Positions 1 through 21,967 of a stretch of 31,603 nucleotides of DNA are shown here, in pieces. The notes beneath the pieces are model-generated. The model was not told the origin of the DNA and searched no databases. It saw nothing but the letters and a program-made list of their open reading frames with translations. The stretch is taken from the NCBI GenBank assembly GCA_002269645.1, contig NIVC01002248.1:1-31603 (forward strand). The letters are read 5' to 3'. Position 1 is the stretch's first letter, and each line of letters starts with the position of its first letter. The position numbers were made by a program, and so were the translations under genes. This DNA is from Macrostomum lignano. Its lineage: Eukaryota.

Positions 1-531
1 CCGCTTTGCCCTGCTGTGCCGGCGCTACAGCCTTGACGACTTCATTAGCGCCATAGCCAGCCTGTCAGACGGCTGCGAGGCTGCCGACGCCGCACTGCTA
101 CTGCGCCGTTGTCCGCCAAGAAGAAGCACAAGAAGCGGCGCGGACTACCCTGGACCCGGCGTCGGCACAGCACTGGCCCCGCCGCCGAGGAGCCGCTGTC
201 CGCCTCTCTGGAGGGTCTCGGCCTTTGCGAGACCGCTGCTCGGGCCGCTGTTCTGCTGGACGAGCCGCTGCCGTCGCCGCCACCAACGCCGCCGACGGCA
301 TCCAATGAGACGGTTGAGACGCAAGCGCAGCCGTCGAAGCAGCCCCAGTCGCAGCCGCCGGCTCAGCCGATTTTAGCGGAGCCGCCTGCGCAGCCGCTGC
401 TGCCGAGGCGCTGCAGGGCCCGGCCAGCTGTTCGCCAGGCGGAGAAAACGCCTACGCAGCGACTGCGTTGTGTTTGGCGAATCGGCCTGACTGTCTGCGA
501 GATGCTTATAGCGAAACTCTCTTGCATTTGA
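1..531 (+). CDS. 3' terminal coding part of an unidentified gene (starts upstream of the window), with one apparent frameshift near 108
   Basis: Frame 2 reads RFALLCRRYSLDDFISAIASLSDGCEAADAALLLR from base 2. It continues after a 1-nt loss into ORF 109..531 (LSAKKKHKKRR NLS-like, then Pro/Gln-rich tail) to TGA 529-531. GC-rich like the other exons, followed by an AT-rich 3' region with AATAAA at 670-675. No family recognised. Confidence 0.55.
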
Positions 532-810
532 CTGATCAATTCGACTCTTCGATTCAACTATGCAACAGTTGTTTGTAAATCTGTTTAAGCAGCAGATTTT
601 TCGCTAGTTTTTTATTTAAACTGTCCTTTGGCTTGCTGTGAAATTTTAACCGCGATCTGGAGTTTTGTTAATAAAATCCTGCACTGAATATTGAACGCAA
701 GTGAATGCATACCGTATGCTTGCATTCAATATTGTTTTTGGCAGTCTTGACCGATTTCAAGTCTCTTGTCGTTTTGCTTTTGTAGGTCCTAGCTCATCTG
801 TGCCAGCAGT

Positions 811-1757
811 GCCATCTCACCTGAGCCCATTAGTCCATCTCATCTGAGCCCATTAGTCCCATCTCATCTGAGCCCATTAGTCCCATCTCATCTGAGCCCA
901 TTAGTCCCATCTCACCTGAGCCCAGTAGTCCCATCTCACCTGAGCCCAGTAGTCCCATCTCATCTGAGCTTAGTAGTCCCATCTCACTGAGCCCAGTAGT
1001 CCCATCTCATCTGAGCCCAGTAGTCCCATCTCATCTGAGCTTAGTAGTCCCATCTCACTGAGCCCAGTAGTCCCATCTCATCTGAGCCAGTAGTCCCATC
1101 TCATCTGAGCCCAGTAGTCCCATCTCACCTGAGCCCAGTAGTCCCATCTCATCTGAGCCCAGTAGTCCCATCTCATCTGAGCCCAGTAGTCCCATCTCAC
1201 CTGAGCCCAGTAGTCCCATCTCATCTGAGCCCAGTAGTCCCATCTCATCTGAGCCCAGTAGTCCCATCTCATCTGAGCCCAGTAGTCCCATCTCATCTGA
1301 GCCCAGTAGTCCCATCTCATCTGAGCCCATAGTCCCATCTCATCTGAGCCCAGTAGTCCCATCTCATCTGAGCCCAGTAGTCCCATCTCATCTGAGCCCT
1401 GTTGTTCATCTCATCTGAGCCCAGTAGTCCCATCTCACTGAGCCCAGTAGTCCCATCTCATCTGAGCCCATTAGTCCCATCTCATCTGAGCCCAGTAGTC
1501 CCATCTCATCTGAGCCCTGTTGTTCATCTCATCTGAGCCCAGTAGTCCATCTCATCTGAGCCAGTAGTCCATCTTATCTGTGCCCATTAGTCCCATCTTA
1601 CCTGTGCCATTAGTCCATCTTACCTGTGCCCATTGGTCCCATCTTACCTGTGCCCATTAGTCCCATCTTACCTGTGCCATTGGTCCCATCTTACCTGTGC
1701 CATTAGTCCCACCTCACCTGTGTCCATTAGTCCCACCTCACCTGTGTCCATTAGTCT
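811..1757. repeat. Tandem minisatellite, ~24-bp unit CTGAGCCCAGTAGTCCCATCTCAT, about 39 copies
   Basis: Unit is directly visible. Central copies are near-identical; right-hand copies drift to CTGTGCCCATTAGTCCCATCTTAC. Confidence 0.97.
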
Positions 1758-2036
1758 TATCAGTTGTAACGTGAACGCAGTAGTGCTATCTCGCTAAGCT
1801 CAGCAGACCTGTCTCGCTGGAGTCTTTTAAACTATAAATTGTGTATATCCTATCATGCTAACATAAAAGCTAGTATTTCAGTCATTATATAATTAAGTGC
1901 TCTTTGAAACGGACAATTTCTAAAATCCAAATTTCTTATTGCAGCAGACCGACCGGAGTTGCTATGCTGTGACCCGGACACTGTCTGGCCAAATATTATC
2001 TAATCTGACGTCAAAGCTTGAATAGCTTCAACAGCT

Positions 2037-5000
2037 ATGGAGTACGACCCCGCTTTTCCAACCGAGTGAGTTTGCTGTTCCATCAGATACCATGCATCAC
2101 TGAAACTATTATCTGGACTGGAGCAGACTCAGACTGAATAGTCCAGATGTGTTTCAGTGGTCCATGATTGCAGCCATGGTTGCGAAATTTATTTTCCACA
2201 TTAATAACAATCAACAAATAACTTTTCAGTGAGCTGGACGAGATTCCGATGCCAGTGCAGGCTGTCAATAGAGCCGCGCCGCCGCCGCCCCTCCGCCTCC
2301 GCCGCCTCCCCCGCCACCCCTCCGCCGCCGCCGCCGCCTCCACCGCCGCCGCCTTCGTCATCGCCGCCTCGGCCGCCGGCCCGAAACCTCCGCAAGTCGC
2401 CGCCGCCGTCATCCAGCCGATCCGACATTGACGACGACTTCGACGGCGACAAGGACTTTGGCAATGTGGCCGACATTCCCCTGCCGGACCAGCTGCCGGC
2501 GCTGGAGCACACCGCGGCCCCTCCACCGCCGGATTTGTCGCACCTGTCCGCCGGCTCTCACCATTCGGCCAGCAGCGGGCCGGTGAAATTCGCATTGAAA
2601 AGCGCATTCGGCATGATCAGCTACGCCAAGAGCGGCTCCGCTGTGCCCTACTCCCAGCAGCAACCGTCTCAGCAGCCGTCAATTGTGGTTGCTTCAATGC
2701 AGCAGCAGTCTGGTGGGCAGCAGAGTGCCACTTCGCCCACCCAGCAGCAGCAGCAGCAACAACAGCAGCAGTGGAAGCAGCCAATGCCGGTCCAAGCACC
2801 GGCCGGACCGGGCAAACGGAAGCCGCTAACCTTGCAGACTGGCGTTTTGCCGGCTAAAAGAAAGAAACTGCCAGAATCGGACAGCGGCCCAGCTAGCAAT
2901 GCCGGACAGGCCGGCGGTGGCAGCGGCGGTGGAGGCGCCGCGCCCATCGGCAACCGACGCGCAGAGCTTTTCCTACCTAACGCGGCCGACATCGAGAAGA
3001 CGCCAATCCAACCGTTCGAGTCCGGATCTGGCGGCTCCTCGGTGCCCAGCACCACGGCGGCCTCATCTTCAGGAGCCGCCCTGACTGGATCTGCAAGCGG
3101 TAGTCGCACCCGCGCTGACAGTGGAAACAGATCCGGTAGTTCCGTTGTCACCGAGTCCAGCGCAGCTGGCGGCATAACCAGCCTCATGAGCAGCAGCATT
3201 GGAGGCGTGTCCTCGCTTGGCTCTGGCGGCCTCGCCAGCCTAAGCGGTGTCGGTGGCCTCAGCGGACTCTCTGGCCTTGGTGGTGTCGGCGGGCTGTCCA
3301 GTCTTGGCGGCATCTCCAGCCTCAGCGGTTCCAGTGCCCTTTCAAACCTCGGCCTGCCAAGCTTGAAACCATCAGCCCAGGGCAAGCCGAAGCATAACCG
3401 GCCGAACCTGCTGCTGGCCGCCAAGCAGGCAGCCGAGGCGCCGCCACTGCCAGACGTGTCGCACCTGAATCCGGCCGCGCTGCCGCCCATTCCCGGCGCT
3501 CTGATGACCCGCCAGGAGGCCGATCGGTTGCGATCTTCGCGAGAACGCGAACTGCTCATGATGCACCAGCGCGACGACGGCTATGTGCAGCGCGATCCCG
3601 GCGAGGACGACGGAGGAGGTGAAGGAGGAGGAAGCCGGCGCCGTCGCCGCTCCAGTGGCTCGCACGGGCACCGGCACAGGCACCGCAAGCGGAGGCGCGG
3701 CTCACGCTCCCCAGACAGCCGGCGCCATCGGCACAGCAGGCACCGAAAGTCTTCGTCGTCTCCGCGCCGGTCGCATCGTGCCTCGTCGCCGGGAGCCTCG
3801 CCGAAGAGACATCACGGCGGCGAGCGTCGGCGTTCAACAGCCGAAGCGAGCAAAAACAACGGAGACGGCGGCGCGGCCAAACCCGGCGGCGGGCGCAGAG
3901 AGTCTGGCGGAAGCTCCTACGAGACCCTGTCGGACGAGGAGCCGCAGCAGCTGACTGACACCGAGATGGGGCTTAGCGACGCTGACAATCGCGGCGCCGC
4001 GCCGTGGCTGCTGGCACTGAGCTGCGTGAGCTGCCAGAGGTTCGCGAGAAAGTGCACATGAGCTTCTCCGGCGGCGACTCCGGTGCGCCAGCCACCGGAA
4101 GCGGCGCCAACGCAACTCAAAGAAGGAACACTTCTGCGTCTAAAGGGCAGCTTAAGTCGACGCTAGCCGAGTTCGGCGAGGACGACGATGACGACGGTTG
4201 TGAAGAAGCTGATAAAGCTGGCGATGAAAAGTCGAAGGAAACAAAGGCCGCCGAATCCAAGTCTGCGGCGGTGGAGCCTGTAGAAGCGCCGCAGAGAGAA
4301 GACGATCGAAGGCCGCAGTCCCAGCTGCGCCGGAGCCTCTCGAAGGACCGCCTGGCCTCGCGATCGGCCCCAACCGCCCAGGAGGCAACGGAGAGCCGGC
4401 GCTCATCGGAGCGATCTAAGGACCGGGTCAGAGAGCGATCGCCCAATGACCAAAGCGGCGAGCGACATCGGGAGGAGCGCCGACGACGACGGTCCCAACG
4501 CCGCCGACTCAGTCGCGCCATCGACATCGGTCGCGAGGCAACAGCCGAGACGCCAAAGAAGACGGCGATCGGGGTAAGGAAGGAAGCACGAGAAGGACCG
4601 GCACCGTCGACACGGCGACAGCAATAGCGGCAGTCGCCGAAGAGACGACAATGGTCGGAATCGGCACGGCAAAAGCCGGTCAAAGCGGCGTCACCGGCGC
4701 GATGACGACGACAGCCGGTCGGCTAGCAGCGGCGAGGCTGATAGCTCTAGCGGCCGTCGAGATCGATCCCAGCGGCATCGACGCCGGCGAAGCCCCGGTG
4801 ACTCTGACGGGTCGGCAGGCGGAGGGGGCGGTGGCGGCGGCGTTAGCGGAGCTGCGCCAGGCGGAGGCGGCGGTCACCGTCAGCAGAATCAGCGGCAGCG
4901 CAGTCGCAGCCGTCAGCGCCGCAGCCGATCGGGCTCTCGGTCCAGACAGCACCACCAGAGCAAGCGAGCTTCGGCCGCTGAACCCTCCGCCGACGAGACC

Positions 5001-8000
5001 TCCGCGGCCAGCAAAGCCGAAGAGCGCGAGCGGCGCCACCTGGAGAGACAGAAGGTGAAGGAGCGGCTGCGCCAAGTCGACGCCATGATCCAGCGGCAGC
5101 GCAGCGGCGGAGGCGATACGGGAGACGACGGTAGCGCAGTCAGAAGCGGTAACGGCGACGCTGGCGCCTCTGGCGACCGCCTGCACGCCACGCGCCAGGT
5201 GGGTGACCGGCGGCGTACCGCGCATTCCGCCCTGCCTGCGGCCTGAACTGCTGAATTTGCATGACCGCCGCCCCCCGGTTTTCCTTCGTCTTTGAATTTT
5301 GTGTGCCCCCCCTTCCAAACGTTCTCGCACCTGGCAAACTTGCTAATACTATATAGCATATGCTTAGCTCGAATATATTTATTAATAATGCAAAACAACC
5401 GCTTGTCGCATTCGTAGCAACCCCGTCAGTTTCCTCTCTACTACCCCCCCCCCATCCCGTTGGTCGTCGTCGAATAAGCTTCAATAAGTTTGTTTTTACA
5501 CTGCCGAGCGATCTATTAATAATTTATATTTTTTCTCATTGTTTTATTAATTTGCCAGGCCTCTATTAAGGTTTCAGTTGGGTTCTGGGGCTTCCCTATT
5601 TAATAGGCGGGTTTCTATTTAAGCAACTGGGTTGTTTGAAGTTTTCCAGATATTCTAGTCATGAGAGCTCTAAGGATTTCAATCTACTTAGTATTAGTAG
5701 TATGGTGAATGCGCGTTCCCGTGGATTTGGTTTAGTCAACATTAATTAAAAACGTTCTACCATTGCATCCCGCCGCCTCGTTGCATTTCACTTTTGCAGC
5801 AACCAAATAGAGCAGCTGGAGCTGCTCACTCGCCAACATGTCCAGCTGCTGATGGGGACCACTTTGATCATGATGATGACCATGGGGATGATGATGCCCA
5901 ATAATCCATCGCTAACAAGCCATGCCCCAGCTCATCCAGCTAGCAATCCCGAACTGTTACCCACCCCAGGAGTCAAAGGCGGCCCCGGTCCGGGTTGACC
6001 AGCCGAAGCAGCAGCCGGTGGCGGCTACAGTCGGCGCAGCTGTCGGCGGTAAGCCCGCTAGTAAAACCGGCAGCTCCGCCGATGCCAACGCCGCTTTCAA
6101 ACAACTGACAGACTTCTTCGGCATGCTGACTAACTTCACCAAGCAGATGCAGAGCCAGGTGGCCATGCAGCAGCGGGAGCTGTCCCGCCTGCGTGCCTCC
6201 GACTCCGGCCCCACAACTGCCGCCGTCTCTGTTGTGCCGACAACTCCGCCGGGCCGACCGCCGCCCGCGCCGAGGCCGGACGATACCGCTGGCGGCGGAT
6301 GCAGCAGCGACATGTCGGTGGCTTCGTCTACCTCGCCGATGCGCGGCGATGGCGGCGGCGGCGCCAGCGATCGTAGCATCAACGAGGTCGAGCTGGACGA
6401 ACAGGACCGGCAGTCCCTCCTGGCCGGCTGCCTCTCCTCGGACGTCGCCGAGCCGGAGGAGCCGCACGACGACACCCTGGATTCGTCCGCCGCCGCTGAG
6501 GCCGCAGCTAAGCGGGCTGCTGCAGCGGCCGCCCTAGAGCCGCTCGAACCGGCCGCGCCGCCGGGCATGTCGCCGCCGAGCTACGAGCTGCTGCAACGAA
6601 GCGTTCCGCTAGCAAAATTTCTCCCGACTGAGCCGGCTTGCGGCTGGCCCTGCGATTGCAGCGTGCCAACGCCCGACCAGGCAGCCAGAGGCGCCGAGGC
6701 CTGCGGCTCCGATTGCGTCAACCGAGCCCTGCGCGTCGAATGCGACAACAGGCGCTGTCCGTGCGGCGAGATGTGCACAAATCGGCGCTTCGACTTGCCG
6801 CCATCGGCCCTGCCGCTTGAGCCTCTGTATCTGGGCGCCAGACGCGACTGGGGCGTCCGCGCCACCTCGTCTGTTGGCGCCGGCGCTTTTCTAATTGAAT
6901 TCGCCGGCGAACTGGTCGACTGGAGCGAGTTTTGGCAGCGTCGTGCAGCGGACAAGGCGGCTGGCAAGCGGCTGTACTTTATGCCGATGGGAGCCAGTCT
7001 GGTGGCTGATGCCACTGCGAATGGCAACCTGGCCAGATTTGTCAGCTGCAGCGGCAGCGCCGGAGTTGAGGCGAACACCGAAGCGCAGGTGTGGGTAACC
7101 GGCGGCCAGCGTCGGCTGGGCCTGTTCGCTAGGCGCGACATCGCCAGAGGTGAGGAGTTGGTCATCGACTGCCGGTTTCTGTCTTGGCCAGCCGCAGTCG
7201 GGGCCGAGACGCGCTGCAGCTGCTGCGGCAAGCCTTCAATGACGCTCGACTTTGGCCACGATGCTAGCCAGCTGCTGACGCTTGAGACTGTGACGCAGCC
7301 TAATGAAGTGATAAGCTTGCTCAGGGTGAGTTGGCTCATGAACTGTGTTGCTGTTGTCTGAGCCCAAATTGATTAGAAAGTCAGTACAGCTGTTGACCCT
7401 GTGTATGTATCCGTGTGGGTGTGTGCTCAGGGATTAGCGGACTGACCTCTTGCCATGATTTGCGGCAGCGTCCACAGACAGCCCTATTTCCGAACTAACT
7501 AGCTAACCCATGCTATCGTGAATTGCTGTTGAAGGCCCTGCTGCACCAGCGAGATTTGCCGATCGAAGCCAGGACCCGACTGCTACAGCTGCTGGCCGAT
7601 GCTGCAGGCCCCGCTGTCGCCGACTGCCTACTGACTCTTCGGCGGCACCACGGGCTGCAACTGACCGCCGCCTGCCTGACCGAGGCAGCGCCCAACTGCT
7701 GCTCGAATTCGTCATCCTCGCCGAACACTCAGCTGGTCTTGGCAGCTCTGCGTACGATGGCCCGCGTGCCGCTGGCATCGGCTGATCAGTTGGCCCGAGC
7801 CTCTGTGGCTGACAGCCTGCAGCAGTTGCTCCGCCGTCTGTCTGGGGACCGGGATGCAGTCGGTCAGCTGGCTGCCGAGCTGCTGGCCCGCTGGGACCGT
7901 CTGCCGAACGAAACAGCGGCTCCCGGTTCCGGCGCGGCAGCGACCGCGTCTTCAACAGCATCAACCCAAGCAGCCGCTCCCGATGCTTCCTTGGCTTTGA

Positions 8001-9103
8001 CTTCGACGACGCCGCAGCCGACGGCGGACAGTTGCGCGGCGGCCGAGGAATTCGACCGGCTGTTCGAGGCGTACGCAGGCATGACGGAGCCCGATAGAAA
8101 GCAGCTGCAGGCGGCCGCCCTCGCCGGCTCGTCCGGCGGGGTGCACGCCATCCTGTGCCGCGTGCTCGAGGCAATGCTACTGCGAGGCGGCAGCGGCGGC
8201 GGCGGCTTCCATGCCAGATCCGCCGCTATGGCCGGCTGCGTCAGCCAGGAGGATCTCGCCGATGCGGCTGCGGCTGATCCGAATGTGCACCGACTACTGC
8301 TGGCTGTCACGCAGCGAGGCGATGCGGGTGAGCCAGTTTTTTTATCGGATCATCGAGTTTTCATGTTTTTTGTGCCTGTCTACTCACGGCAGTAAGTAGT
8401 ATAATTTTCGCATTGTATTTGCATTTCATTTTGCAGCCGTCGCAGCTTCGGGCGGCCTGCCGCCGCAATGGCGCTCGGCCCGCGATCCGGACGGCCGTGT
8501 GTACTTTTACCATCTGGGCACCAGGCGGACTGTGTGGCGCGACCAGCCGGGTAGCGAGCACTCCTGGGAGCCCACCTATCCGTGGGACGCCCTGCCCGAA
8601 GAGACCGCTGCGGAGCCATCGGCGGCCGCCTCCGAGGCTGCCTTCGAGTACAACGGAGCCTGGCGCTTCCAGGTGTCCCACGACGAGATCCAGGACATGA
8701 TCACCCGGAACGCCGTGAAAATCCGGCGCCGGGAGCGCGTTGAAAAGTTGAACAGAGGCGCCGCGAGGTGGCCAGCTCGCGCGAGCTGCAGCAGAAGGCT
8801 GCCTTCACCGCCTCGATGAAGGAGTTCGTCCACGCGCACCTGCAGCGCTACTGCGCCGCCACCTGCCAGACTGGCCGCATCACCAATCAAGAGGACTTGA
8901 AGTACTTAGTCAAGAAGATGACTCACGCAATCCTGCTGAAGGAGCTGAAGCACACGCGCCATATTGAAGACCTGGAGGTGAACGCCAATGTGCAGGGCAA
9001 GGCGAAGTCTTATATTAGCAAGTATATGCGCAGCAAGGGCTCAGTGTACTGCAGGACCGGCCGGCCCTCAGCCTCTGGACACGGCGGGCCGGCTCTGCAG
9101 TGA
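2037..9103 (+). CDS. setd2: SETD2/Set2-like protein (H3K36 methyltransferase architecture) with degenerate catalytic motifs; 5 coding exons
   Basis: Exons inferred from GT-AG sites with matching phases: 2037-2065 (MEYDPAFPT), 2230-5198, ~5970-7325 (acceptor uncertain: 5799, 5930, 5939 or 5969), 7535-8327, 8437-9103. Domains: AWS (CDC...CGSDCVNRALRVEC...CPCGEMCTNRRF), SET/post-SET ~6800-7240, helical TFIIS-N-like region 7535-7900, WW (LPPQWRSARDPDGRVYFYHLGTRRTVW), C-terminal SRI (CQTGRITNQEDLKYLVKKMTHAILLKELK...AKSYISKYM). The AWS-SET-WW-SRI order is diagnostic of SETD2. Six 1-nt frameshifts must be assumed (~2290, ~2319, ~4000, ~4515, ~4583, ~8762). Confidence 0.9.
6651..7240 (+). other. AWS-SET-postSET module of the SETD2-like gene
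   Basis: Translation of ORF 5922..7361 aligns colinearly by eye with the remembered SETD2 catalytic domain: WGVRA, IEFAGE, YFM, DAT.NGNLARF, Q.W...G..RLGLFA...I..GEEL..D, CSC. Confidence 0.92.
8457..8550 (+). other. WW domain of the SETD2-like protein
   Basis: LPPQW-RSARDPDGRVYFYH-LGTRRTVW-RDQP matches the WW signature (W..YY/YF..W..P). It is visible only after splicing 8327 to 8437. Confidence 0.9.
8790..9060 (+). other. SRI (Set2-Rpb1 interaction) domain
   Basis: FTASMKEFVHAHLQRYCAATCQTGRITNQEDLKYLVKKMTHAILLKELKHTRHIEDLEVNANVQGKAKSYISKYM closely parallels the metazoan SETD2 C-terminus. Confidence 0.9.
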
Positions 9104-9577: not shown

Positions 9578-10544
9578 AAACGGCAAAAATTTTGAATTTT
9601 TGCTCTTCAAAATTTATGCATAAAAGAGTTAATTTTTTGAACTTTAGGCTTCAATTGATGGTTTTGCTGCGGAGTACTTCTTTGTCTTTTCTATTTGCCT
9701 GTTCATTTCATGTTTTGTACTGATATGCCATGTTTTTGTATCAAATCTGTAAGTTGTACAGATTTCAGTTTTCAATTCATTATGTTCGAATTGCCCAGCT
9801 GGAAGGCTTGTAATGCAAGTGAATTACAGTCGGCTGAACATTGTCAGAACAACTCTTATTTAAGAACTCCGGTTTGGCCTTTCTTTCCTCTTCGTTTCTA
9901 TTTCTGCAGTTACTGATTGGCTTAGCTTAGCTGGGAACTATCGAGTATCTGATCCCTTTTGGAGAGAATATTGAATATCCAACTACTCAGTGTAAACCGT
10001 CGTTTACTATCGCCTATTGATCGGCAGTGCTTTTTTTGCCTAGTCATGCCGGGCGTGAGCTTTGGCTGCTACGGGTTCGGCGGGCTGCCTCTCCCCGCTC
10101 TTTCCGCCTCTCTCACCCTCGTAGGGGTGGGGGGCGCTGGCCGTCTTATTATGGCAACGTGCCTTAGTAAACAGCTGAAATTACGAGAAACAGCATTTCG
10201 CTAGAGTTTAAACACAAGGCACAGCCGGCAGCCCCACCCAATGCCCAAAGTTCCACGCTGGAATCGCAGTTTGGAACCGGGGGAGGGGGCGGGTTTGCCT
10301 CCACGCTGGCAGTAAGAGGGGGCGGGTGGATAGGACGGGTTTTTTGAACAGTAACATCACTCAGCCCCTGCGTGATTTCTAAAAATAGACTGGGATCACT
10401 GTACAATCCTGTCCCGCAATGGGTCACGTGCTTCATAGTGGGCGTGCGTATCGAAATGTACAGGCGTATAAATGTACAGCATTGCCCCGTGTTCCAACAT
10501 TGCAATTCCAGCTCTCTTGCTCTGGCGTTCTACCGGGTCGCGGA

Positions 10545-10563
10545 CCAATAGGAAAACGCCACG
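10545..10563 (+). promoter_or_regulatory. ERSE (ER stress response element) CCAAT-N9-CCACG
   Basis: CCAAT aggaaaacg CCACG is an exact consensus with a 9-nt spacer, ~250 nt upstream of the xbp1 ATG. Confidence 0.85.
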
Positions 10564-10600
10564 ACGCGTTACAGTCAGCCTTATTTAAACAACGGACTGC

Positions 10601-10609
10601 TGACGTGGA
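10601..10609 (+). promoter_or_regulatory. UPRE (TGACGTGGA), XBP1s/ATF6-type binding site
   Basis: Exact TGACGTGG(A) between the ERSE and the TATA box of xbp1. Confidence 0.75.
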
Positions 10610-10693
10610 AGTTTCTCAAGCGGTTTTTTCTGAGGTAGTTTCGTCATACAATCTTGGACTGAATTGACCGATTACCTTTGGTACTGATCATCC

Positions 10694-10700
10694 TATATAA
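10694..10700 (+). promoter_or_regulatory. TATA box of xbp1
   Basis: TATATAA followed by G, ~120 nt upstream of ATG 10817 and downstream of the ERSE and UPRE. Confidence 0.65.
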
Positions 10701-10816
10701 GCATCGCCGCATGGCTTTGTAATGGGTTAGACAACTCTCCCAGTCTTAAATATTTCATCATCAATCTCTTGCATCAGAAGAACATAACACATCCTGCTTC
10801 GCTTTGTAACGCAGAG

Positions 10817-12365
10817 ATGACTATCAACGCGTCATCGAAAGTCGTGTACGCCCTGCTGCAGAAGGCGGGCATCGCCGGGCCGCAGATGTGCCTGGTTGAA
10901 GTCCCTGGCGGCAACGGTAAGCTGGCGCTGACCCAACAACAACAGCAGCAGCTGTTCAAGCGAGCCGACGCGTCGGCCGACTTCGTCGATGTTTCGGAGT
11001 CGGCCGCGCCTCCCGCGTCGACTTGTTTTGTCGGCGGCGGCGGCAGCGGGACTAAGATCATTAGTCCAGCCGACAGCTCGCAGCAGCACTTTCGCAAGCG
11101 CAAGATGATGCAGGAGCCGCGCCTGCTCGACATGGAGGACGCCCAGCCTGCGCGCATCGTCCTCGGCTCGACAAATCCGGCGTCGGCTTTGTCCCCGGCC
11201 CTGTCGACTTCAACATCGTCGTCTTCGTCAGTGGCTGCGGCAGACTCGAAGATTCGCACCGAATCGGAGAATCTGGTTCTGCAGAAGGCCCCACTAGATT
11301 CGTCGACCTACTCGACTTTGTCCTTCGACGAGTTCGAGGATGACGACGACCTGCTCGGCTCGTCAATCTACGGCCGGAAGCGGGCTCGGCTCAACCACCT
11401 GACCGCTGACGAGAAACTGACCCGACGGTAAGCTTTGAATCAGTTGTAAATTAAGACTCACCCGGAAGTCATTCCTGCGATACTACTTACTTGTCTACTT
11501 TAAGTAGTCTGTAGAAAATAATTCTATTCTATTCTCGTTGACAATTTTCCAGGAAAGTAATGAACCGCATCGCGGCTCAGCAGGCTCGCGACCGGAAGAA
11601 GCAGAAAATGGAAAAGATGGAGTCGGCGTTGCAGCGACTGGAGGTTGAGAATCGCTACTTGCGCTGCGAGAACTCTGAGCTTAAGGAGAAGCTGGAAAAG
11701 CTGGGCAGCAGGCTGAACCACCTGCTTGTGCAGCTGGAGGGCGGCTGCAGCCAGGGCGTTTCAGCTCTGAGCGGCGCGCGCTCGACCCCGGCAGACAGGA
11801 CAGCAGTGCCTGTGGCCAACCCTCAGCAGCAGGGTCGGGGTCTGGCGCGCCTGCTCATGACGCTGGCGCTCGCGCTGCAGCTGGCTCGACCGGCTGCGCA
11901 CAGCGGCAAAATCAGTCCCAGAACCAGCACCGGCGCCTCCTGCCGCTCGGCAGCTCGCGTGGCGGCCGACCGGCTCCGGCGGCGACTGCAGGCGACTCTG
12001 GCCAGCCGACGCAAGTGTCAGGCCTGGATGGCCGACACCTGGCCACCGCCGCCGGCGCTGGCGCCGAAACCGCCTGCGCTGGCACCCTCGACGCTCCGGC
12101 CTTTGCAGTTCCAGACGTCGACTGGCCTGTCGCTGCCGAGCCCGCCGGTGCTGATGGCGGCGACCTCCTAGCCGGCCTCGGCGACCTGCTGTTCGACCAG
12201 TCGGCGCTCAACCAGCTGGACTCGCTGCTGCTCTGCGACAGTCCGGACGCTCCGTCTAGCGAGTCCGGCGTCTTCTCCGACGCGCCCCTGATGCCCGGCC
12301 TGGCGTCGGCGGCGTCCCCAGACTCCGACGACCTCAGCGCGCTGTTGGACATTAACAGTGATTGA
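10817..12365 (+). CDS. xbp1: X-box binding protein 1 (bZIP UPR transcription factor); unspliced form XBP1u ends at 12171 (409 aa), IRE1-spliced form XBP1s ends at 12365 (466 aa)
   Basis: Exon 1 10817-11427, phase-2 GT-AG intron 11428-11552, exon 2 from 11553. The join gives RKRARLNHLTADEKLTRR|KVMNRIAAQQARDRKKQKMEKMESALQRLEVEN..., the XBP1/Hac1 basic region and zipper. Removing 11804-11826 joins it to the acidic ORF ending DDLSALLDINSD*. Confidence 0.95.
11804..11826 (+). other. 23-nt unconventional (IRE1-cleaved) intron of xbp1 mRNA
   Basis: CAG'CAGT ... CAG'CAGC boundaries match the CNG'CNG loop consensus. 3' hairpin: ACCCT/AGGGT stem with 7-nt loop CAGCAGC. 5' hairpin: ACAGG/CCTGT stem. 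Removal shifts into a long open acidic frame. Confidence 0.9.
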
Positions 12366-12933
12366 TTGATAGTCCGCTTATCGAATTCGAGCGTGGCTTT
12401 TTCTTCTCTCATTTTTCTCATCTCCTGTTCGCGCAGAACCTCTCTTTGAATTTCATATTTTTGCTTGTCGCAGCTTCTAATCGGTTCGCCGACCTGCAAT
12501 CAGTCGTCCGCTCGCTTGATCCGTTTTATTCTTCCTCGAATCCTCCAGTCGTGTTTCCGGTTAATCCTCGCCCCAAATCCGCCATTCATCGGTTCGGTTT
12601 GTGTGCTTTTTTGTTTTCCATTAGCCCCGCACCGTCTGGCCCAGTTAGCGGCCCACTGTAGTTTTGTGTTTAAACCCTGTTTATTTTCTGCGTTTATGAA
12701 TAGTTTATTTTGTGTTTTTTGTCCTGCTCCCCTCACCCTGACCCCAACGTGTCTGTGTTCGGCTCGCGCCGCTGTTGTCCCTTTCATATAAAATATGGTT
12801 ATGTCTGATTAAACATGTGTTTAAATTAATTTTATCAGTGGCACCGATACTGTACAGAGAGAAGGCATTAGTCTGGCGTGTGTTCTGTTCTAAGAGAAAT
12901 ATAACCAGCATGCTTTGCGTCACTTGGGCGTTC

Positions 12934-12939
12934 AATAAA
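12934..12939 (+). terminator. Candidate polyadenylation signal of xbp1
   Basis: AATAAA ~570 nt after the XBP1s stop, in a pyrimidine/AT-rich 3' region. Confidence 0.4.
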
Positions 12940-13030
12940 ATGCTAAGCAAAAATTCTATAAAAACCTGATACAAATAACTCAGACTTTGCATTCTTTTCT
13001 TTTCGTTTTAATTATGAAATCATTTGAGTT

Positions 13031-13266
13031 CAACAACAACAACAACAACACTAATAATAATTGATCACACCTGCTCCAATAAGCTCAGCGACAAGGACTG
13101 GGGGGGGGTCGCCACAGACCCTCAATTACCCCAGCTAATGCTGGCACCCATTTTACAGCTGGGTGAACTGAAGCAATGCCGAGTTTAAATGTCTTGCCCA
13201 AGGGCAAATCGTTCCGAGTGGGTCGAGAGTCGAACCCACGACCTTATTTACTAGGCTACAACCCCG
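13031..13266 (-). mobile_element. tRNA-derived CORE-like SINE with (GTT)n tail
   Basis: Minus strand: degenerate A-box (TAGCCTAGT), B-box GGTTCGACTC, then CCCTTGGGCAAGAC...GCTTCAGTTCACCCAGCTGTAAAATGGG. This resembles the MIR/CORE domain (CCTTGGGCAAG...CCTCAGTTTCCTCATCTGTAAAATGGG). It ends in a TTA/GTT microsatellite at 13031-13060. Confidence 0.75.
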
Positions 13267-13934
13267 TTGAGTTCAGATATTAGCGATTAAATACATTTAG
13301 TTGTCATCAGGGAAAACAGAAATATGAAGTTTTAGTTTTTCCTTTGCAACATTACTCGATTCTTGATAGACCATTTAGGAGCGAGTTAAATTAATGCCAC
13401 ATTTACACGTGCTCTACTGTTAGTAGCATATCCCGCGTGTCCTGTAAACGCGCCAACTGACTCGTATAATCGTATTTTGAGGGTGGCGAATGGATGAAAA
13501 TCCCCGTTTCGTAGGCCGCCTCTGCTTTTGAAATTAGTGCCAACTTTCCCAAAACTACGAGCGTATATGTAACCTGTCAACATCACCGTCGTGTTCACAG
13601 GCATGCTTTAATTGTAAATTGTCAATACAAATGGATTGGAACTTCAGGGGACACTATAGAAAACTTTTTTTTACAAAAATTGCCATAGCCACTTTTCTCA
13701 TCGTATTCTGAAGACTTTAGTATTCGATCTCTATAAATAAACTAACTACGAGTAATGCGAAACCGAATCAGAGTTTCGTGACATTAGTAGACTATGTAAT
13801 TAGCTCGTAATGTGAAGTATCATCCGCCTGCAATCTATTTGCCTGCAGTCTTTCGTAGAAAGTTGGCTGAAAAAACGCAAGCTACCATTAGCGATCCATC
13901 GATTGTCGACATGATTCAGAAATTGGAGCGCAAC

Positions 13935-14478
13935 AGTGCAGGTGTAAATGCCTAATTCAGAACATTAATGCAGGTGTAAATGCCTAATTCAGAACATTGG
14001 TGCAGGTGTAAATGCCTAATTCAGAACATTGGTGCAAGTGAAAATGCCTAATTCAGAACATTGGTGCAGGTTTAAAAATGCCTAATTCAGAACATTGGTG
14101 CAGGTGTAACAATGCCTAATTCAGAACATTGGAGTGCAGGTGTAACAATGCCTAATTCAGAACATTGGTGCAGGTGTAAATGCCTAATTCAGAACATTAG
14201 AGTGCAGGTGTAAATGGTAGATTTATCTCTAGGTTTCGAGTGCGTAAATAGTCTATGGCACGAGTGCGCTAACGCACACTGAAGGAACATAGTGATAGAT
14301 TCATTGATTTATGGGCAAAGCATTCTTCTGGTTTTAGCCATAGAATGCTAATACTGTGCAGTAAATCCCAAGCCGTGCTGTAAATTCCATTTAAGAATGC
14401 TTGGCCATATGTCAATGCCTAATTCAGAACATTAGAGTGCAGGTGTAAATGCCTAATTCAAAACGTTAGAGTGCAGCG
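13935..14478. repeat. Tandem repeat, ~31-35-bp unit GTGCAGGTGTAAATGCCTAATTCAGAACATTG; about 8 copies (13935-14216) plus about 2 copies (14414-14478) after an interruption
   Basis: Unit is directly visible; interrupted by ~200 bp of unrelated sequence. Confidence 0.92.
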
Positions 14479-14643
14479 GCAGTGTGACCTTTGCTGCGCT
14501 CTTTTAGCGCACTGCGCTATTTCAATATCTGCGCCTCAATGCTTGCGCATTTTAGCTGACAGCGCTAAAATGTTCATTCTGATTTATTGTCTTTTTATCT
14601 AATATCTGCGTTAATCAATGTCTTAAGTCAGCATAAATTAATT

Positions 14644-16312
14644 AATACCTGAATACCTGAATACCTGAATACGTGAATACCTGAATACCCGAAGGCCTGA
14701 ATACCTGAATACCTGAATACGTGAATACCTGAATACGTGAATACCTGAATACCCGAAGGCCTGAATACCTGAATAACTGAATACGTGAATACCTGAATAC
14801 CCGAAGGCCTGAATACGTGAATACCTGAATACGTGAATACCTGAATACCTGAATACTTGAATACCTGAATACCCGAAGGCCTAAATACCTGAATACCTGA
14901 ATACCTGAATACCTGAATACGTGAATACTGAATACATGTACCTGAATACTTGAATACCTGAATACCTGAATACGTGAATACCTGAATACGTGAATACGTG
15001 AATACTGAATACATGTACCTGAATACTTGAATACCTGAATACCTGAATACGTGAATACCTGAATACGTGAAAACCTGAATACGTGAATACGTGAATACCT
15101 GAATACCTGAATACCTGAATACTTGAATACTTGAATACTTGAATACTTGAATACTTGAATACTTGAATACTTGAATACTTGAATACTTGAATACGTGAAA
15201 ACCTGAATACCTGAATAACTGAATACGTGAATACCTGAATACCCGAAGGCCTGAATACGTGAATACCTGAATACGTGAATACCTGAATACCTGAATACTT
15301 GAATACCTGAATACCCGAAGGCCTAAATACCTGAATACCTGAATACCTGAATACCTGAATACGTGAATACTGAATACATGTACCTGAATACTTGAATACC
15401 TGAATACCTGAATACGTGAATACCTGAATACGTGAATACGTGAATACTGAATACATGTACCTGAATACTTGAATACCTGAATACCTGAATACGTGAATAC
15501 CTGAATACGTGAAAACCTGAATACGTGAATACGTGAATACCTGAATACCTGAATACGTGAATACGTGAATACTTGAATACTTGAATACTTGAATACTTGA
15601 ATACTTGAATACTTGAATACTTGAATACTTGAATACGTGAAAACCTGAATACGTGAATACGTGAATACGTGAATACCTGAATACCTGAATACCTGAATAC
15701 GTGAATACGTGAATACTTGAATACTTGAATACTTGAATACTTGAATACTTGAATACTTGAATACTTGAATACTTGAATACTTGAATACTTGAATACTTGA
15801 ATACTTGAATACTTGAATACTTGAATACTTGAATACTTGAATACTTGAATACTTGAATACTTGAATACTTGAATACTTGAATACTTGAATACTTGAATAC
15901 TTGAATACTTGAATACTTGAATACTTGAATACTTGAATACTTGAATACTTGAATACCTGAATACTTGAATACTTGAATACTTGAATACTTGAATACTTGA
16001 ATACTTGAATACTTGAATACTTGAATACTTGAATACTTGAATACTTGAATACTTGAATACTTGAATACTTGAATACTTGAATACTTGAATACCTGAATAC
16101 TTGAATACTTGAATACTTGAATACTTGAATACTTGAATACTTGAATACTTGAATACTTGAATACTTGAATACTTGAATACTTGAATACTTGAATACTTGA
16201 ATACTTGAATACTTGAATACTTGAATACTTGAATACTTGAATACTTGACTACTTGAATACTTGAATACTTGAATACTTGAATACCTGAATACTTGAATAC
16301 TTGAATACCTGA
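14644..16312. repeat. 8-bp satellite (GAATAC[T/C/G]T)n, ~1.67 kb
   Basis: More than 200 copies of GAATACTT/GAATACCT/GAATACGT. Variant-rich on the left, nearly pure GAATACTT from ~15715 to 16300. Confidence 0.98.
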
Positions 16313-16840
16313 CTCCCGTGGAAGGCACAAACAGTCATAACATTTGCTCCCTGTTCTTGGCCTGTGTTTATTCAACCGGATCTGCATGGCTTCGATCGGT
16401 CAGTCATGGGGCCGCACAGTAAATCTCTGAATTTCCAATGCGAGCCCGGGCCCTTCCAGCCATAAATCAGTCTCCAACCCAATGCTCTCAAGTCATTGGC
16501 AAGCACCGAAAATTGGCATATTGCACTAATACAATTTACCGTGGGAACTAACTATCGCACCACCACTTCTTACCCCCCCCCAGGATCAATAACAGAAAAA
16601 TCGATAACGGAAATTGAGTTAAGTATTTGAGGATTAAAGAAGCGCATCAAGGTATAACAATGACTAATGAGTATACTGCATTGCCACTATTATAAATGTG
16701 TTGTGTGTGGGGGGGGGGGTAGTTTTCAGTTGCATATTCGATAACGGGATCCCAAAACTAAAGCTCGAATCTTTATCGTTAACTCCAAATTTCCAGATGC
16801 TAAAAATCTATTTGGCATGTCCTCACAAACCTCACAGACT

Positions 16841-17660
16841 CTAAGCTTCACAAATCCAAAGCTTCACAAACCCTAAGCTTCACAAACCCCAAGCTTCACA
16901 AATCCCAAGCTTCACAAATCCTAAGCTTCACAAACCCTAAGCTTCACAAACTCAAAGCTTCACAAACCCTAAGCTTCACAAACCCCAAGCTTCACAAATC
17001 CCAAGCTTCACAAATCCTAAGCTTCACAAACTCAAAGCTTCACAAACCCTAAGATTCACAAACTCAAAGCTTCACAAACCTAAGCTTCACAAACCCTAAG
17101 CTTCACAAATCACAAGCTTCACAAACCCCAAGCTTCACAAACCCAAAAGCTTCACAAATCCTAAGCTTCACAAACCCAAAATCTTCACAAACCCAAAATC
17201 TTCACAAACCCAAAAGCTTCACAAACCCCAAGCTTCAAAAACCCAAAAGCTTCACAAATCCTAAGCTTCACAGACCCTAAGCTTCACAAACTCAAAGCTT
17301 CACAAACCCTAAGCTTCACAAACCCCAAGCTTCACAAATCCCAAGCTTCACAAATCCTAAGCTTCACAAACTCAAAGCTTCACAAACCCTAAGATTCACA
17401 AACTCAAAGCTTCACAAACCTAAGCTTCACAAACCCTAAGCTTCACAAATCCTAAGCTTCACAAACCCCAAGCTTCACAAACCCAAAAGCTTCACAAATC
17501 CTAAGCTTCACAAACCCAAAATCTTCACAAACCCAAAATCTTCACAAACCCAAAAGCTTCACAAATCCTAAGCTTCACAAACCCCAAGCTTCAAAAACCC
17601 AAAAGCTTCACAAATCCAAAAGCTTCACAAACCTAAGCTTCACAAACCTAAGCTTCACAG
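16841..17660. repeat. ~16-bp minisatellite AAGCTTCACAAACCC(T/C/A), about 50 copies
   Basis: Unit is directly visible; most copies contain AAGCTT. Confidence 0.97.
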
Positions 17661-18060
17661 AACCTAAGTCTCATTCAAGCTGGTTGCCACATGCCGACTG
17701 AAGCAATTCCATAGCGGAAATGTGAATGCATGTAAAACAAACAACTTGCCCTTTGGTCTCCATATTGCTATAGAAATCCGCCCCATGGCTCTACTCTCAC
17801 AGCAAAGCAAACAAGCCTTTGCAAACCCCCCTACTTTTGGAGACAGGCAGGCAAACACGGCAAATTGGTTTGGGACATTCTGGCCAATAGGAGCTCCGCG
17901 CGCTTTCACCGAGCATCATCCAGAGCGCACAAAAAGTTACTGTGCCAATGCTTTCGGCCATATCGACTCTGTCTGTCACTCTGCCCAGCTTTCAATCAAG
18001 CTGAGAGATAAGTTTAACCTAAGCTGCCCTAGATCGAGCTGATCGAATATTTTTCCACTC

Positions 18061-21000: not shown

Positions 21001-21967
21001 TTGGGAAAGGAACCAGGATCTTTGGAGGCGATCATCAAGCGGAGAAAGCTCAAATATTACGGACATCAGACAAGAAAGGGAGCCATGGCAGATGTCTGTA
21101 TTCAATGAAAAATGGAGGGTGAAAAAAAGAAGAGAAAGACCAAAAAGGCAGTGGGAGGATGACCTGAAAGAATGAACCGGATGGACAAATGGAGAGGTTA
21201 AGAAGAGCAGCAAAGGACAGGCAAGGCAGTGGTGGCGGAAGCTGGTGCATGAATGGGCGCGCCCACGGCCATGACAGCTACTGTAAAGAAGAAGAAGAAT
21301 GTAAAAAACTTGGCATTTAGAAATAAATATACCTGAACTTGAGCTTGATCTTCAACCTCCTCCACAGGTGATCGCCGTGGACGCCAACGCCCGCAATCTG
21401 ATGCGAGTTCGCATGGCCCTGCGCGAAGCTACGTCGGCGAACCCGTCCGCGTCACCATCAGCCAGCAGCTCTGCCGCTCCGTACGGCTCCGTCAGCCTCC
21501 TGTGGAGCTTCATCAGTTCCGACAGGAGCCGCTTGGCCAGGCTGAACTATCCAGCTGATTGCAACATCGGCGGCGCCACCAAGTTCGCCCGCTCGGTGCC
21601 CGACCCCGTGGAGGTGATGCCGCTGGCCGCCGACCAGCTCGTCCAGCTGGTGCCCACGCGGATGGTGCTGCTGAAGCTGGACGCCGAAGGCGGCGAGGCC
21701 GACTTCCTGCGCACGGCCGGCCGCCTTTTCAAAGACAGGAAAGTGGCGGCCGTCCAGATGGAGTGGCTCAGCAGGCACCTCACGGGCACGGACTCCGCCG
21801 ATGCCCTGGCTTTCTTCAACTCGCACGGCTACACGGCCCACTCTGTAGACGGGAAAACACAATTGAATCAGGGGTGGACCCTAACCTGGCCAGATAATGT
21901 GCTTTGGGTTCAACGGGACTCCGGAACCATCGACACAATCTACCATCGTCTAACTCCGGAACCATAG
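18061..21967 (+). CDS. Type II membrane-anchored FkbM-family (Methyltransf_21-like) SAM-dependent methyltransferase, ~380 aa, 3 exons
   Basis: Exons 18061-18228 (MLSNMRWKK plus hydrophobic LLVFSIAVALTVAIVHWAAM; CAG|GTGAGT), 20376-20750 (branch-like CTAAT then TTTCCAG| acceptor) and 21368-21967, all phase 0, join without stops. FkbM motifs: LIDIGCNIGTYTLQAAALGFP|VIAVDAN, LLKLDAEGGE, VQMEW, GY..., DNVLW. Confidence 0.85.
18250..18970. repeat. Intronic tandem repeat, ~31-bp unit GGATCTACTGGGATTC(T/G)GTAGATCTACTATC
   Basis: About 22 copies directly visible in intron 1 of the methyltransferase gene; many contain the palindrome GTAGATCTAC. Confidence 0.95.
19781..20235. repeat. Intronic tandem repeat, 21-bp unit GATTAGATATGGATTGAGGTA
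   Basis: About 21 copies with variants; the + strand is nearly C-free. Confidence 0.95.
20770..21300 (+). mobile_element. 5'-truncated, decayed RTE-clade (BovB-like) LINE 3' end in intron 2 of the methyltransferase gene
   Basis: Broken frames give MIRLEELWRLKGVNLKNRLKITKAV, ESWTLG, FEMKSYRR, SLEAIIKRRKLKYYGH, KMEG.KRR.RPKRQWEDDLKE, all matching the RTE ORF C-terminus. It ends in a (GAA)n tail at ~21288-21299. Confidence 0.82.

What the first reader, a model, noticed from the sequence alone, without database searches (positions are those of the whole stretch)
6840..7240. SETD2 homologue with every catalytic SET motif substituted: candidate pseudo-methyltransferase scaffold
Seen in sequence: GWG becomes DWG (GAC 6846); EYxGE becomes EFAGE (TTC 6900); RFxNHSCxPN becomes RFVSCSG-SAGV-EAN (N>S 7044, H>C 7047, C>G 7053, plus a 4-aa insertion); ELTFDY becomes ELVIDC (TGC 7170); post-SET CxCx4C becomes CSCCGKPS. 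Established: in SETD2 the NH pair (N1628/H1629) binds SAM, C1631 plus three post-SET Cys bind Zn, and Y1579/Y1666 form the lysine channel. These are in-frame substitutions, not indel noise, while AWS cysteines, WW, SRI and splice sites are well preserved. Inference: a catalytically dead SETD2 paralogue that still rides elongating Pol II, acting as an H3K36/nucleosome reader, decoy or splicing adaptor. I know of no described example.
Basis: partly seen in the sequence, partly recalled or inferred. Interest (0 to 1): 0.85.

Follow-up and report, generated by a model that had tools for sequence, protein, structure and literature searches.

The report
Flatworm SETD2 with dead catalytic site
The flatworm Macrostomum lignano's version of SETD2, the enzyme that normally marks transcribed genes with H3K36 methylation, has lost essentially every residue needed for catalysis but kept its polymerase-docking parts, so it most likely works as a non-enzymatic scaffold.

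Summary
The window is a 31.6-kb contig of Macrostomum lignano. Positions 2037-9103 (+) hold a five-exon gene with SETD2 architecture: AWS, SET, helical region, WW and SRI. Its SET domain is the only one among 153 nearest homologues that lacks the invariant Gly of GWG, the invariant SAM-binding Asn, the catalytic Tyr and three of four post-SET zinc cysteines.

The change is domain-specific. SET and post-SET evolved two to eight times faster than in parasitic-flatworm orthologues. AWS, WW and SRI evolved no faster, or more slowly.

A near-identical sister contig carries an uninterrupted 1939-codon reading frame. The gene models are RNA-seq based, so this is not a decayed pseudogene.

Shared N-terminal motifs suggest the flatworm SETD2 orthologue rather than an old paralogue. 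Whether a second, intact SETD2 exists could not be tested here.

One correction: in this contig six single-base homopolymer deletions break the frame, five in exon 2 and one between WW and SRI. They are probably assembly errors.

Best reading: a SETD2 pseudo-methyltransferase that still docks on elongating Pol II. Dead SET domains are known in other families (MLL5, SET-24), but I found none described for SETD2.

The parts
2037..2065 (+). Exon 1: start codon, MEYDPAFPT(D); donor GTGAGT
   Evidence: The N-terminus matches MEYDPASPTDEL of Mesocestoides, Schistosoma and Paragonimus SETD2.
2230..5198 (+). Exon 2: about 990 codons of low-complexity, Pro/Ser/Arg-rich N-terminal region. In this contig five one-base deletions (2287, 2316, 4000, 4493, 4581) break the frame.
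   Evidence: The sister contig L001 has one open 1009-codon frame here.
5970..7325 (+). Exon 3: linker plus AWS, SET and post-SET; acceptor AG, donor GTGAGT; no indel relative to L001
6651..6791 (+). AWS zinc-cluster domain (CDC...CTNRRF); all seven cysteines kept
   Evidence: Pfam AWS 5.7e-11.
6849..7169 (+). SET domain core (Pfam envelope); the fold is predicted to be retained
   Evidence: Pfam SET 2.1e-11. AlphaFold pLDDT is above 90 over most of it. The top Foldseek hits are human SETD2.
6846..6854 (+). DWG in place of GWG (G1561D; Gly in 153 of 153 homologues)
6897..6911 (+). EFAGE in place of EYxGE (Y1579F)
7035..7076 (+). RFVSCSGSAGVEAN in place of RFxNHSCxPN: N1628S, H1629C, C1631 lost, four-residue insertion
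   Evidence: pLDDT dips to 76 here.
7155..7172 (+). ELVIDC in place of ELTFDY (catalytic Y1666C)
7212..7238 (+). Post-SET remnant RCSCCGKPS. C1685 is lost under any alignment; C1678 or C1680 is retained depending on the alignment.
   Evidence: The post-SET region is modelled with pLDDT below 60.
7535..8327 (+). Exon 4: helical region that aligns weakly with the conserved region after post-SET in other SETD2 proteins, followed by an Ala/Gly-rich linker
   Evidence: There is no Pfam hit.
8437..9103 (+). Exon 5: WW (8457-8537), an A-run at 8743-8746 one base shorter than in L001 (frameshift in this contig), SRI (8816-9049), stop codon 9101-9103
   Evidence: Pfam WW 4.8e-09, SRI 6.9e-16.

Best explanation
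This locus is the Macrostomum lignano orthologue of SETD2/Set2. Its SET domain has become a pseudo-enzyme.

Shown:
- The fold-defining and AWS zinc residues are kept.
- The residues that hold S-adenosyl-methionine and perform methyl transfer are replaced. These are the first Gly of GWG, the Asn-His pair, the catalytic Tyr and the post-SET zinc cage.
- The divergence is confined to SET and post-SET.

Inferred:
- The protein cannot methylate H3K36.
- It is still made and kept by selection, because the other modules are conserved. These are AWS, the helical region after post-SET, WW and the SRI domain, which in other species binds the phosphorylated Pol II tail.
- It therefore still docks on elongating RNA polymerase II. 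There it acts as a non-catalytic scaffold for elongation, splicing or chromatin factors, and may still bind the H3 tail or the nucleosome.

Whether it is the animal's only SETD2 is open.
For: Identity and architecture:
- Pfam finds AWS, SET, WW and SRI.
- The best solved-structure matches, by sequence and by fold, are human SETD2.
- The closest proteins are cestode, trematode and monogenean SETD2.
- The N-terminal motifs are shared with those proteins.

Loss of catalytic residues:
- Of 51 alignment columns at least 90% conserved in 153 homologues, all 12 AWS columns are kept and 15 of 39 SET/post-SET columns are changed.
- The changes include G1561D, N1628S, H1629C, C1631V, Y1666C, C1678S and C1685M, none of which is seen in any other sequence.
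- A conserved Asn side chain hydrogen-bonds SAM in all SET structures, and a catalytic Tyr activates methyl transfer (PMC3178901).
- MLL5, which lacks the same xGxG, Tyr and NH motifs, binds no SAM and has no activity (PMC5094779).

Domain-specific rates:
- Identity to outgroups for M. lignano versus parasitic flatworms is 34-37% versus 51-58% in SET, 20% versus 35-50% in post-SET, 47-55% versus 40-51% in AWS, 51% versus 33-43% in WW and 42% versus 29-35% in SRI.
- Tajima-type counts of unique changes in SET plus post-SET are 31-36 for M. lignano against 4-18 (p = 2e-6 to 0.014). In the other domains M. lignano has fewer unique changes than the parasites. The Fisher contrast gives p = 5e-7 to 8e-3.

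Not a decayed pseudogene:
- L001 carries a 1939-codon frame with no stop. The chance expectation from base composition is about 1e-20.
- All introns are GT-AG.
- The annotation is built from RNA-seq transcripts (PMC5730564).
- The SET core is modelled with pLDDT above 90.

Plausibility of a scaffold role: mouse SETD2 has a catalysis-independent role in promoting PAF1C-Pol II interaction (PMC13187324).
Against: - No biochemical test was done, so inactivity is inferred from sequence.
- His1629 is replaced by Ser in 8 of 153 homologues, and Tyr1579 by Phe in 3, so those two changes alone are not decisive.
- A cluster of cysteines (VSCS plus CSCC) could in principle form a remodelled zinc site.
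- No orthologue from another Macrostomum species was found. Selection on the degenerate SET domain itself could therefore not be measured. The two copies differ by only 3 synonymous and 2 non-synonymous changes.
- AlphaFold confidence partly reflects the canonical homologues in the alignment.
- In this contig the frame is broken six times. If those breaks are real rather than assembly errors, this copy is non-functional.
- Expression is inferred from how the annotation was made, not from reads I saw.
Confidence: 0.65

Rival explanations
1. It is a divergent extra copy. M. lignano also has a canonical, active SETD2 elsewhere, and this gene is a duplicate freed to lose catalysis. It is compatible with the pseudo-enzyme reading but changes its significance.
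For: M. lignano has a highly duplicated genome (PMC5730564). My searches for a second copy had limited reach: one search listed only proteins shorter than about 400 residues and did not recover its own query sequences, and one search shows only the best 150 of 4670 hits.
Against: - The only M. lignano proteins retrieved are models of this same gene.
- No hit scores between the self-match and the 44%-identical cestode SETD2. This argues against a duplicate that arose within the Macrostomum lineage.
- Outside WW and SRI, none of the 150 best hits resembles this protein.
- The gene keeps the orthologue-type N-terminus.
- The known genome duplication is too recent to explain about 33 unique SET changes, because the duplicated copies here are about 99.8% identical.
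Confidence: 0.35
2. It is a pseudogene in decay, with no function for any part of the protein.
For: This contig has six frame-breaking one-base deletions. Its GenBank protein is partial and ends in a frameshifted tail before SRI. The catalytic residues are gone.
Against: - All the indels lie in homopolymer runs of a PacBio-based assembly (PMC5730564).
- The sister contig has an intact 1939-codon frame, about 1e-20 by chance.
- AWS, WW and SRI evolve no faster than in active orthologues.
- Splice sites are intact.
- The gene models come from transcripts.
Confidence: 0.08
3. It is still an active methyltransferase with a remodelled active site, or with a new substrate.
For: The SET fold is predicted to be intact. 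Arg1625, Phe1626, Trp1562, Tyr1605 and several H3-groove residues (Phe1589, Phe1606, Met1607, Glu1636, Gln1638, Phe1668) are kept. Ser at the His1629 position occurs in 8 canonical-looking homologues.
Against: The invariant Asn (153 of 153), the first Gly of GWG (153 of 153) and the catalytic Tyr (all 151 sequences with a residue there) are all replaced at once. The post-SET zinc cage that closes the lysine channel is lost. The same set of losses makes MLL5 inactive.
Confidence: 0.06
4. It is an assembly or sequencing artefact in the motifs.
For: The assembly has homopolymer errors nearby.
Against: The changes are base substitutions plus two in-frame 12-nt insertions, not homopolymer slips. 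Two contigs agree across exon 3 except for one synonymous site.
Confidence: 0.01

Closest known systems
SETD2 / Set2 (KMT3A) of other animals, closest in cestodes, trematodes and monogeneans (for example Mesocestoides corti A0A158QT09, Taenia asiatica, Schistosoma rodhaini, Cichlidogyrus)
   Same: It has the same domain order: AWS, SET, post-SET position, helical region, WW and SRI. It has a similar length (1939 versus 1922 residues) and shared N-terminal motifs. These are also the best sequence and fold matches.
   Different: All of those proteins keep GWG, NH(S)C, the catalytic Tyr and the CxCx4C post-SET motif. This protein has DWG, SC, Cys and CSCC with no third cysteine, plus four-residue insertions after the NH position and before post-SET.
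MLL5 (KMT2E) / SETD5 / yeast Set3 / Drosophila UpSET: SET-domain proteins without intrinsic activity
   Same: They show the same kind of loss. The xGxG, Tyr and NH motifs are replaced while the SET fold is kept, and the protein works through its other chromatin-binding modules (PMC5094779).
   Different: They belong to a different SET subfamily with different partner domains (PHD rather than AWS, WW and SRI). The loss there is ancient and family-wide. Here it is a lineage-specific loss inside an otherwise uniformly catalytic family.
C. elegans SET-24 and (from my own knowledge) plant SUVH2/SUVH9: catalytically inactive SET proteins that act as chromatin adaptors
   Same: They are pseudo-methyltransferases that still regulate chromatin (PMC12886896 abstract).
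   Different: They are unrelated subfamilies with no link to the Pol II tail.
Catalytic-dead SETD2 point mutant in mouse cells
   Same: It shows that SETD2 protein without methyltransferase activity can still carry out a function, namely supporting PAF1C-Pol II interaction and neuronal differentiation (PMC13187324).
   Different: That is an engineered single substitution. Here the loss is a natural, multi-site degeneration.

Membership tests
SETD2/Set2 orthologue group | AWS domain immediately before SET | tested here: met
   Pfam AWS 5.7e-11. All seven zinc cysteines are present.
SETD2/Set2 orthologue group | SET domain most similar to SETD2 rather than NSD or ASH1L | tested here: met
   PDB search: SETD2 1e-33, ASH1L 1e-28, NSD 1e-22 or weaker. 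The nearest database proteins are flatworm SETD2. No formal phylogenetic tree was built.
SETD2/Set2 orthologue group | C-terminal WW and SRI (Set2-Rpb1-interacting) domains | tested here: met
   WW 4.8e-09 and SRI 6.9e-16. They are contiguous in frame in L001. In the window they are separated by a one-base frameshift.
SETD2/Set2 orthologue group | Post-SET CxCx4C zinc motif with the SET-C cysteine | tested here: not met
   C1631V, C1678S and C1685M; only one or two of the four ligands remain.
SETD2/Set2 orthologue group | H3K36 trimethyltransferase activity | not testable with these tools
   This needs an enzyme assay. The sequence predicts no activity.
SETD2/Set2 orthologue group | Single orthologous locus in the genome, with no other SETD2 | tested here: inconclusive
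   Only models of this gene were retrieved for M. lignano. The searches could not cover the whole genome.
Catalytically competent SET-domain lysine methyltransferases | xGxG (GWG) SAM-binding motif | tested here: not met
   G1561D. Gly is present in 153 of 153 homologues.
Catalytically competent SET-domain lysine methyltransferases | NH pair of RFxNHSC (the Asn side chain binds SAM) | tested here: not met
   N1628S (Asn in 153 of 153) and H1629C. The role of the Asn is from PMC3178901.
Catalytically competent SET-domain lysine methyltransferases | Catalytic Tyr of ELxFDY | tested here: not met
   Y1666C. Tyr is present in all 151 sequences that have a residue there.
Pseudo-methyltransferase SET proteins (functional class, not a clade) | SET fold kept, cofactor and catalytic motifs lost, rest of the protein under constraint | tested here: met
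   The constraint is shown by relative rates, not by dN/dS.
Pseudo-methyltransferase SET proteins (functional class, not a clade) | Demonstrated lack of SAM binding and activity | not testable with these tools
   This needs recombinant protein.

The most novel reading that the evidence does not exclude
M. lignano has no catalytically competent SETD2 at all, and its sole orthologue is this pseudo-enzyme. In that case co-transcriptional H3K36me3 in this animal is either absent or written by another enzyme, and the function selection has preserved in SETD2 is the non-catalytic, Pol II-bound one. That would be a natural separation-of-function experiment in a transgenic, RNAi-tractable model.
Probability: 0.35. 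Interest if true: 0.85.

Novelty: new variant of a known kind. Interest (0 to 1): 0.66.

Why it matters
SETD2/Set2 is treated as the universal writer of H3K36me3 on transcribed genes. Whether its important jobs need catalysis is an active question, since mouse work now reports catalysis-independent roles (PMC13187324).

A natural SETD2 that keeps AWS, WW and SRI under normal constraint but has lost the SAM-binding and catalytic residues would show that the non-catalytic function alone can be worth keeping. M. lignano offers RNAi and transgenesis, so this can be tested.

If it is the only SETD2 in the genome, it also raises the question of who, if anyone, makes H3K36me3 there. That matters because the species is reported to retain DNMT1 and DNMT3 with low-level DNA methylation (PMC11292947).

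It also warns annotators: the database names 'histone-lysine N-methyltransferase' for this protein are probably wrong as to activity.

Tried and rejected
- a word-indexed homology search with the SET exon returned nothing, not even the self-match, so it was uninformative.
- the same tool with the 954-residue model found only three M. lignano models of this gene, one moth SETD2 and an algal protein. It found no orthologues from other Macrostomum species, so dN/dS per domain could not be computed.
- a profile of six flatworm SET domains, meant to reveal a canonical M. lignano SETD2, listed only proteins shorter than about 400 residues and missed its own query sequences. It found no Macrostomum hit, but the test is inconclusive.
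- the metagenome scan gave one unrelated, AT-rich, canonical SET gene (L003).
- literature searches for Macrostomum with SETD2 or H3K36, and for the gene identifiers, found nothing relevant.
- I considered an 83-nt GT-AG intron (8673-8755) as a way to restore the WW-to-SRI frame. I rejected it because the sister contig simply has one more A in the run and reads straight through.
- The comparison of the two copies has no power for selection tests: five substitutions in 5.8 kb.
- I ran no further search on naming more of the top 150 hits. None resembles this protein outside WW and SRI, so the chance of finding a Macrostomum paralogue was low.
Full report
**What the window is.** The window is GC-rich exons set in AT-rich, repeat-laden DNA. 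A protein search matched the exon at 5916-7358 at 100% identity to PAA52569.1 (BOX15_Mlig017137g2) of the free-living flatworm Macrostomum lignano. A second annotated protein, BOX15_Mlig028966g3, sits on a contig of exactly 31,603 bp, which is this window. The sister contig NIVC01003215.1 was fetched as L001. It is 97.6% identical over 13.4 kb and about 99.8% identical across the gene.

**Checking the observation.** Translation of exon 3 gives an AWS domain followed by a SET domain.
- The best solved-structure match is human SETD2 (1e-33). ASH1L and NSD score lower. HMMER aligns RFVSCS-GSAG-VEAN with RFMNHS----CEPN.
- L001 has the same exon apart from one synonymous change, so the substitutions are not read noise.

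**How unusual it is.** I aligned the domain with the 150 best hits from a library of 1.84 billion cluster representatives, plus a few cluster members.
- Fifty-one columns are at least 90% conserved in the 153 other sequences.
- The flatworm protein keeps all 12 such columns in AWS. It changes 15 of the 39 in SET and post-SET.
- The changes, in human numbering, are K1560R, G1561D, Y1579F, H1603R, I1615A, N1628S, H1629C, C1631V, P1633A, K1639V, V1642T, Y1666C, C1678S, C1685M and G1687L.
- Eleven of these residues occur in none of the 153.
- No other sequence in the set lacks the Asn, the first Gly of GWG or the catalytic Tyr. That includes cestode, trematode, monogenean, mollusc and rotifer SETD2.
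- The numbering is anchored on my recollection that RFMNHSC starts at Arg1625.

**The gene.** Using L001 and the annotated models, I derived five exons, all with GT-AG introns. In window coordinates they are 2037-2065, 2230-5198, 5970-7325, 7535-8327 and 8437-9103.
- From L001 the coding sequence is 5820 nt, or 1939 codons, with no internal stop. Given its base composition, the chance expectation is about 1e-20.
- The protein begins MEYDPAFPTDEL and carries ADIPLPD and TGVLPAKRK motifs. These recur at the N-termini of Mesocestoides, Schistosoma and Paragonimus SETD2.
- It ends with WW (8457-8537) and SRI (8816-9049) domains.
- Architecture, length and lineage-specific motifs suggest the flatworm SETD2 orthologue.

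The window lacks single bases relative to L001 at 2079, 2287, 2316, 4000, 4493, 4581 and 8742.
- Every one lies in a homopolymer run.
- Five break exon 2. The one at 8742 puts SRI out of frame with WW.
- As a result, the GenBank protein for this contig is partial and ends in a frameshifted tail.
- The assembly is PacBio/Canu polished with Pilon and contains 180 Mb of blocks duplicated at 95% identity or more (PMC5730564). These deletions are therefore most likely assembly errors on a redundant contig. I cannot exclude a damaged second copy.

**Domain-specific divergence.** I measured identity to outgroups (a vertebrate and the mollusc Elysia) for M. lignano and for its parasitic-flatworm orthologues.

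| Region | M. lignano | Parasitic flatworms |
|---|---|---|
| AWS | 47-55% | 40-51% |
| WW | 51% | 33-43% |
| SRI | 42% | 29-35% |
| SET core | 34-37% | 51-58% |
| Post-SET | 20% | 35-50% |

Tajima-type counts of lineage-unique changes used four flatworm comparators and two outgroups.
- In SET plus post-SET, M. lignano has 31-36 unique changes against 4-18 (p = 2e-6 to 0.014).
- In the non-catalytic domains pooled, M. lignano has fewer unique changes (for example 37 against 52).
- The contrast between the two classes gives Fisher p = 5e-7 to 8e-3.

The protein as a whole is therefore not fast-evolving. Only the catalytic module is.

**Structure.** AlphaFold2, run with an 82-sequence alignment, gives mean pLDDT 79.
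- AWS and the SET core are mostly above 90.
- There is a dip to 76 at the four-residue insertion.
- The post-SET region falls below 60.
- Foldseek returns human SETD2 first.
- The alignment consists of canonical homologues, so this shows compatibility with the fold, not proof of it.

**What the losses mean.**
- In all solved SET structures one conserved Asn side chain hydrogen-bonds the cofactor. A catalytic Tyr activates methyl transfer, and a second Tyr orients the lysine (PMC3178901).
- Human MLL5 lacks the xGxG, Tyr and NH motifs. It was shown experimentally to bind no SAM and to have no activity (PMC5094779).
- The flatworm protein has the same classes of loss and has also lost the post-SET zinc cage.
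- Several residues I recall as lining the H3 groove are kept: Phe1589, Phe1606, Met1607, Glu1636, Gln1638 and Phe1668. Residual H3 or nucleosome binding is therefore possible but untested.

**Is it used?**
- The annotation of this assembly is a genome-guided RNA-seq transcript assembly (PMC5730564). The two gene models therefore imply transcription, but I saw no reads.
- The two copies differ by 3 synonymous and 2 non-synonymous changes, too few for a selection test.
- No orthologue from another Macrostomum species was retrievable.

**Is there an intact SETD2 elsewhere in the genome?** This could not be tested.
- The only M. lignano proteins found are models of this gene.
- Nothing scores between the self-match and the 44%-identical cestode proteins. 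This argues against a duplicate born within the Macrostomum lineage.
- None of the 150 best hits resembles this protein outside WW and SRI.
- The profile search designed to find a canonical copy was biased towards short proteins and is inconclusive.

**Mechanism proposed.**
- Shown: SETD2 architecture, selective loss of cofactor and catalytic residues, normal conservation of AWS, WW and SRI, and an intact long reading frame.
- Inferred: the protein cannot methylate H3K36. It still binds the phosphorylated Pol II tail through SRI and acts as a scaffold. A catalysis-independent role of this kind is reported for mouse SETD2, which promotes PAF1C-Pol II interaction (PMC13187324).
- Rivals are listed separately: an active enzyme with a remodelled site, a decaying pseudogene, an artefact, and a paralogue living beside an intact copy.

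**Comparison and novelty.** Pseudo-methyltransferase SET proteins are known in other subfamilies: MLL5, SETD5, Set3 and UpSET, C. elegans SET-24, and, from my own knowledge, plant SUVH2/9. I found no report of a SETD2/Set2 family member with a dead SET domain, and no paper on this gene. I rate it a new variant of a known kind. Interest is moderate to high, and it rises considerably if this proves to be the animal's only SETD2.

Noticed in passing
window 2079, 2287, 2316, 4000, 4493, 4581, 8742 (also 1893, 5306, 5529): There are single-base length differences from the sister contig L001, all in homopolymer runs. Six of them break the SETD2 reading frame in this contig. The GenBank protein BOX15_Mlig028966g3 is consequently partial and truncated before SRI.
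   Followed up: yes
window 10817-12362 (+), especially 11804-11826: The downstream gene is an XBP1-like bZIP factor (Pfam bZIP 8e-08) with two overlapping reading frames. A 23-nt segment flanked by CAG|CAG at both ends lies in twin small hairpins, and removing it joins the bZIP frame to the second frame. This is a candidate IRE1-type unconventional intron. The fold z-score is only -1.4.
   Followed up: partly
window 2000-9000 versus 10000-14100, compared with L001: Divergence between the two contigs is very uneven. It is about 0.2% across the SETD2 gene, introns included, and about 3-4% across the XBP1-like gene and the region downstream. This could reflect gene conversion, a mosaic of haplotypes or subgenomes, or an assembly effect.
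   Followed up: no
window 786-1756; 13936-14216; 14644-16312; 16832-17668; 18254-18968; 19810-20236; 21918-22267: Seven large tandem arrays lie around the genes: 24 nt x41, 32 nt x8.5, 8 nt x210, 16 nt x52, 31 nt x23, 21 nt x20 and 31 nt x11. The 8-nt array creates long spurious ORFs on the minus strand (14631-16399).
   Followed up: no
window 20346-21964 (+): Two ORFs here have weak to moderate methyltransferase matches: Methyltransf_21 (FkbM type) at 1.3e-06 for 21305-21964, and Methyltransf_23 at 0.006 for 20346-20918. They may be exons of one gene, and a tandem repeat overlaps its 3' end.
   Followed up: no
UniProt A0A1I8HAG4 (P0151) and A0A1I8G5F4 (P0157); L001 6325-9327 and 10001-13183: Public gene models for this locus are inconsistent. 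Two UniProt models fuse the SETD2 C-terminus to the XBP1-like gene. The GenBank annotation of the sister contig splits SETD2 into a 652-residue and a 954-residue protein. The full 1939-residue protein does not seem to be annotated anywhere.
   Followed up: partly
L001 1-3637; window 1-530: The upstream neighbour in L001 is an RRN3 (Pol I initiation factor) homologue. The open frames at the very start of the window probably belong to its 3' end.
   Followed up: no
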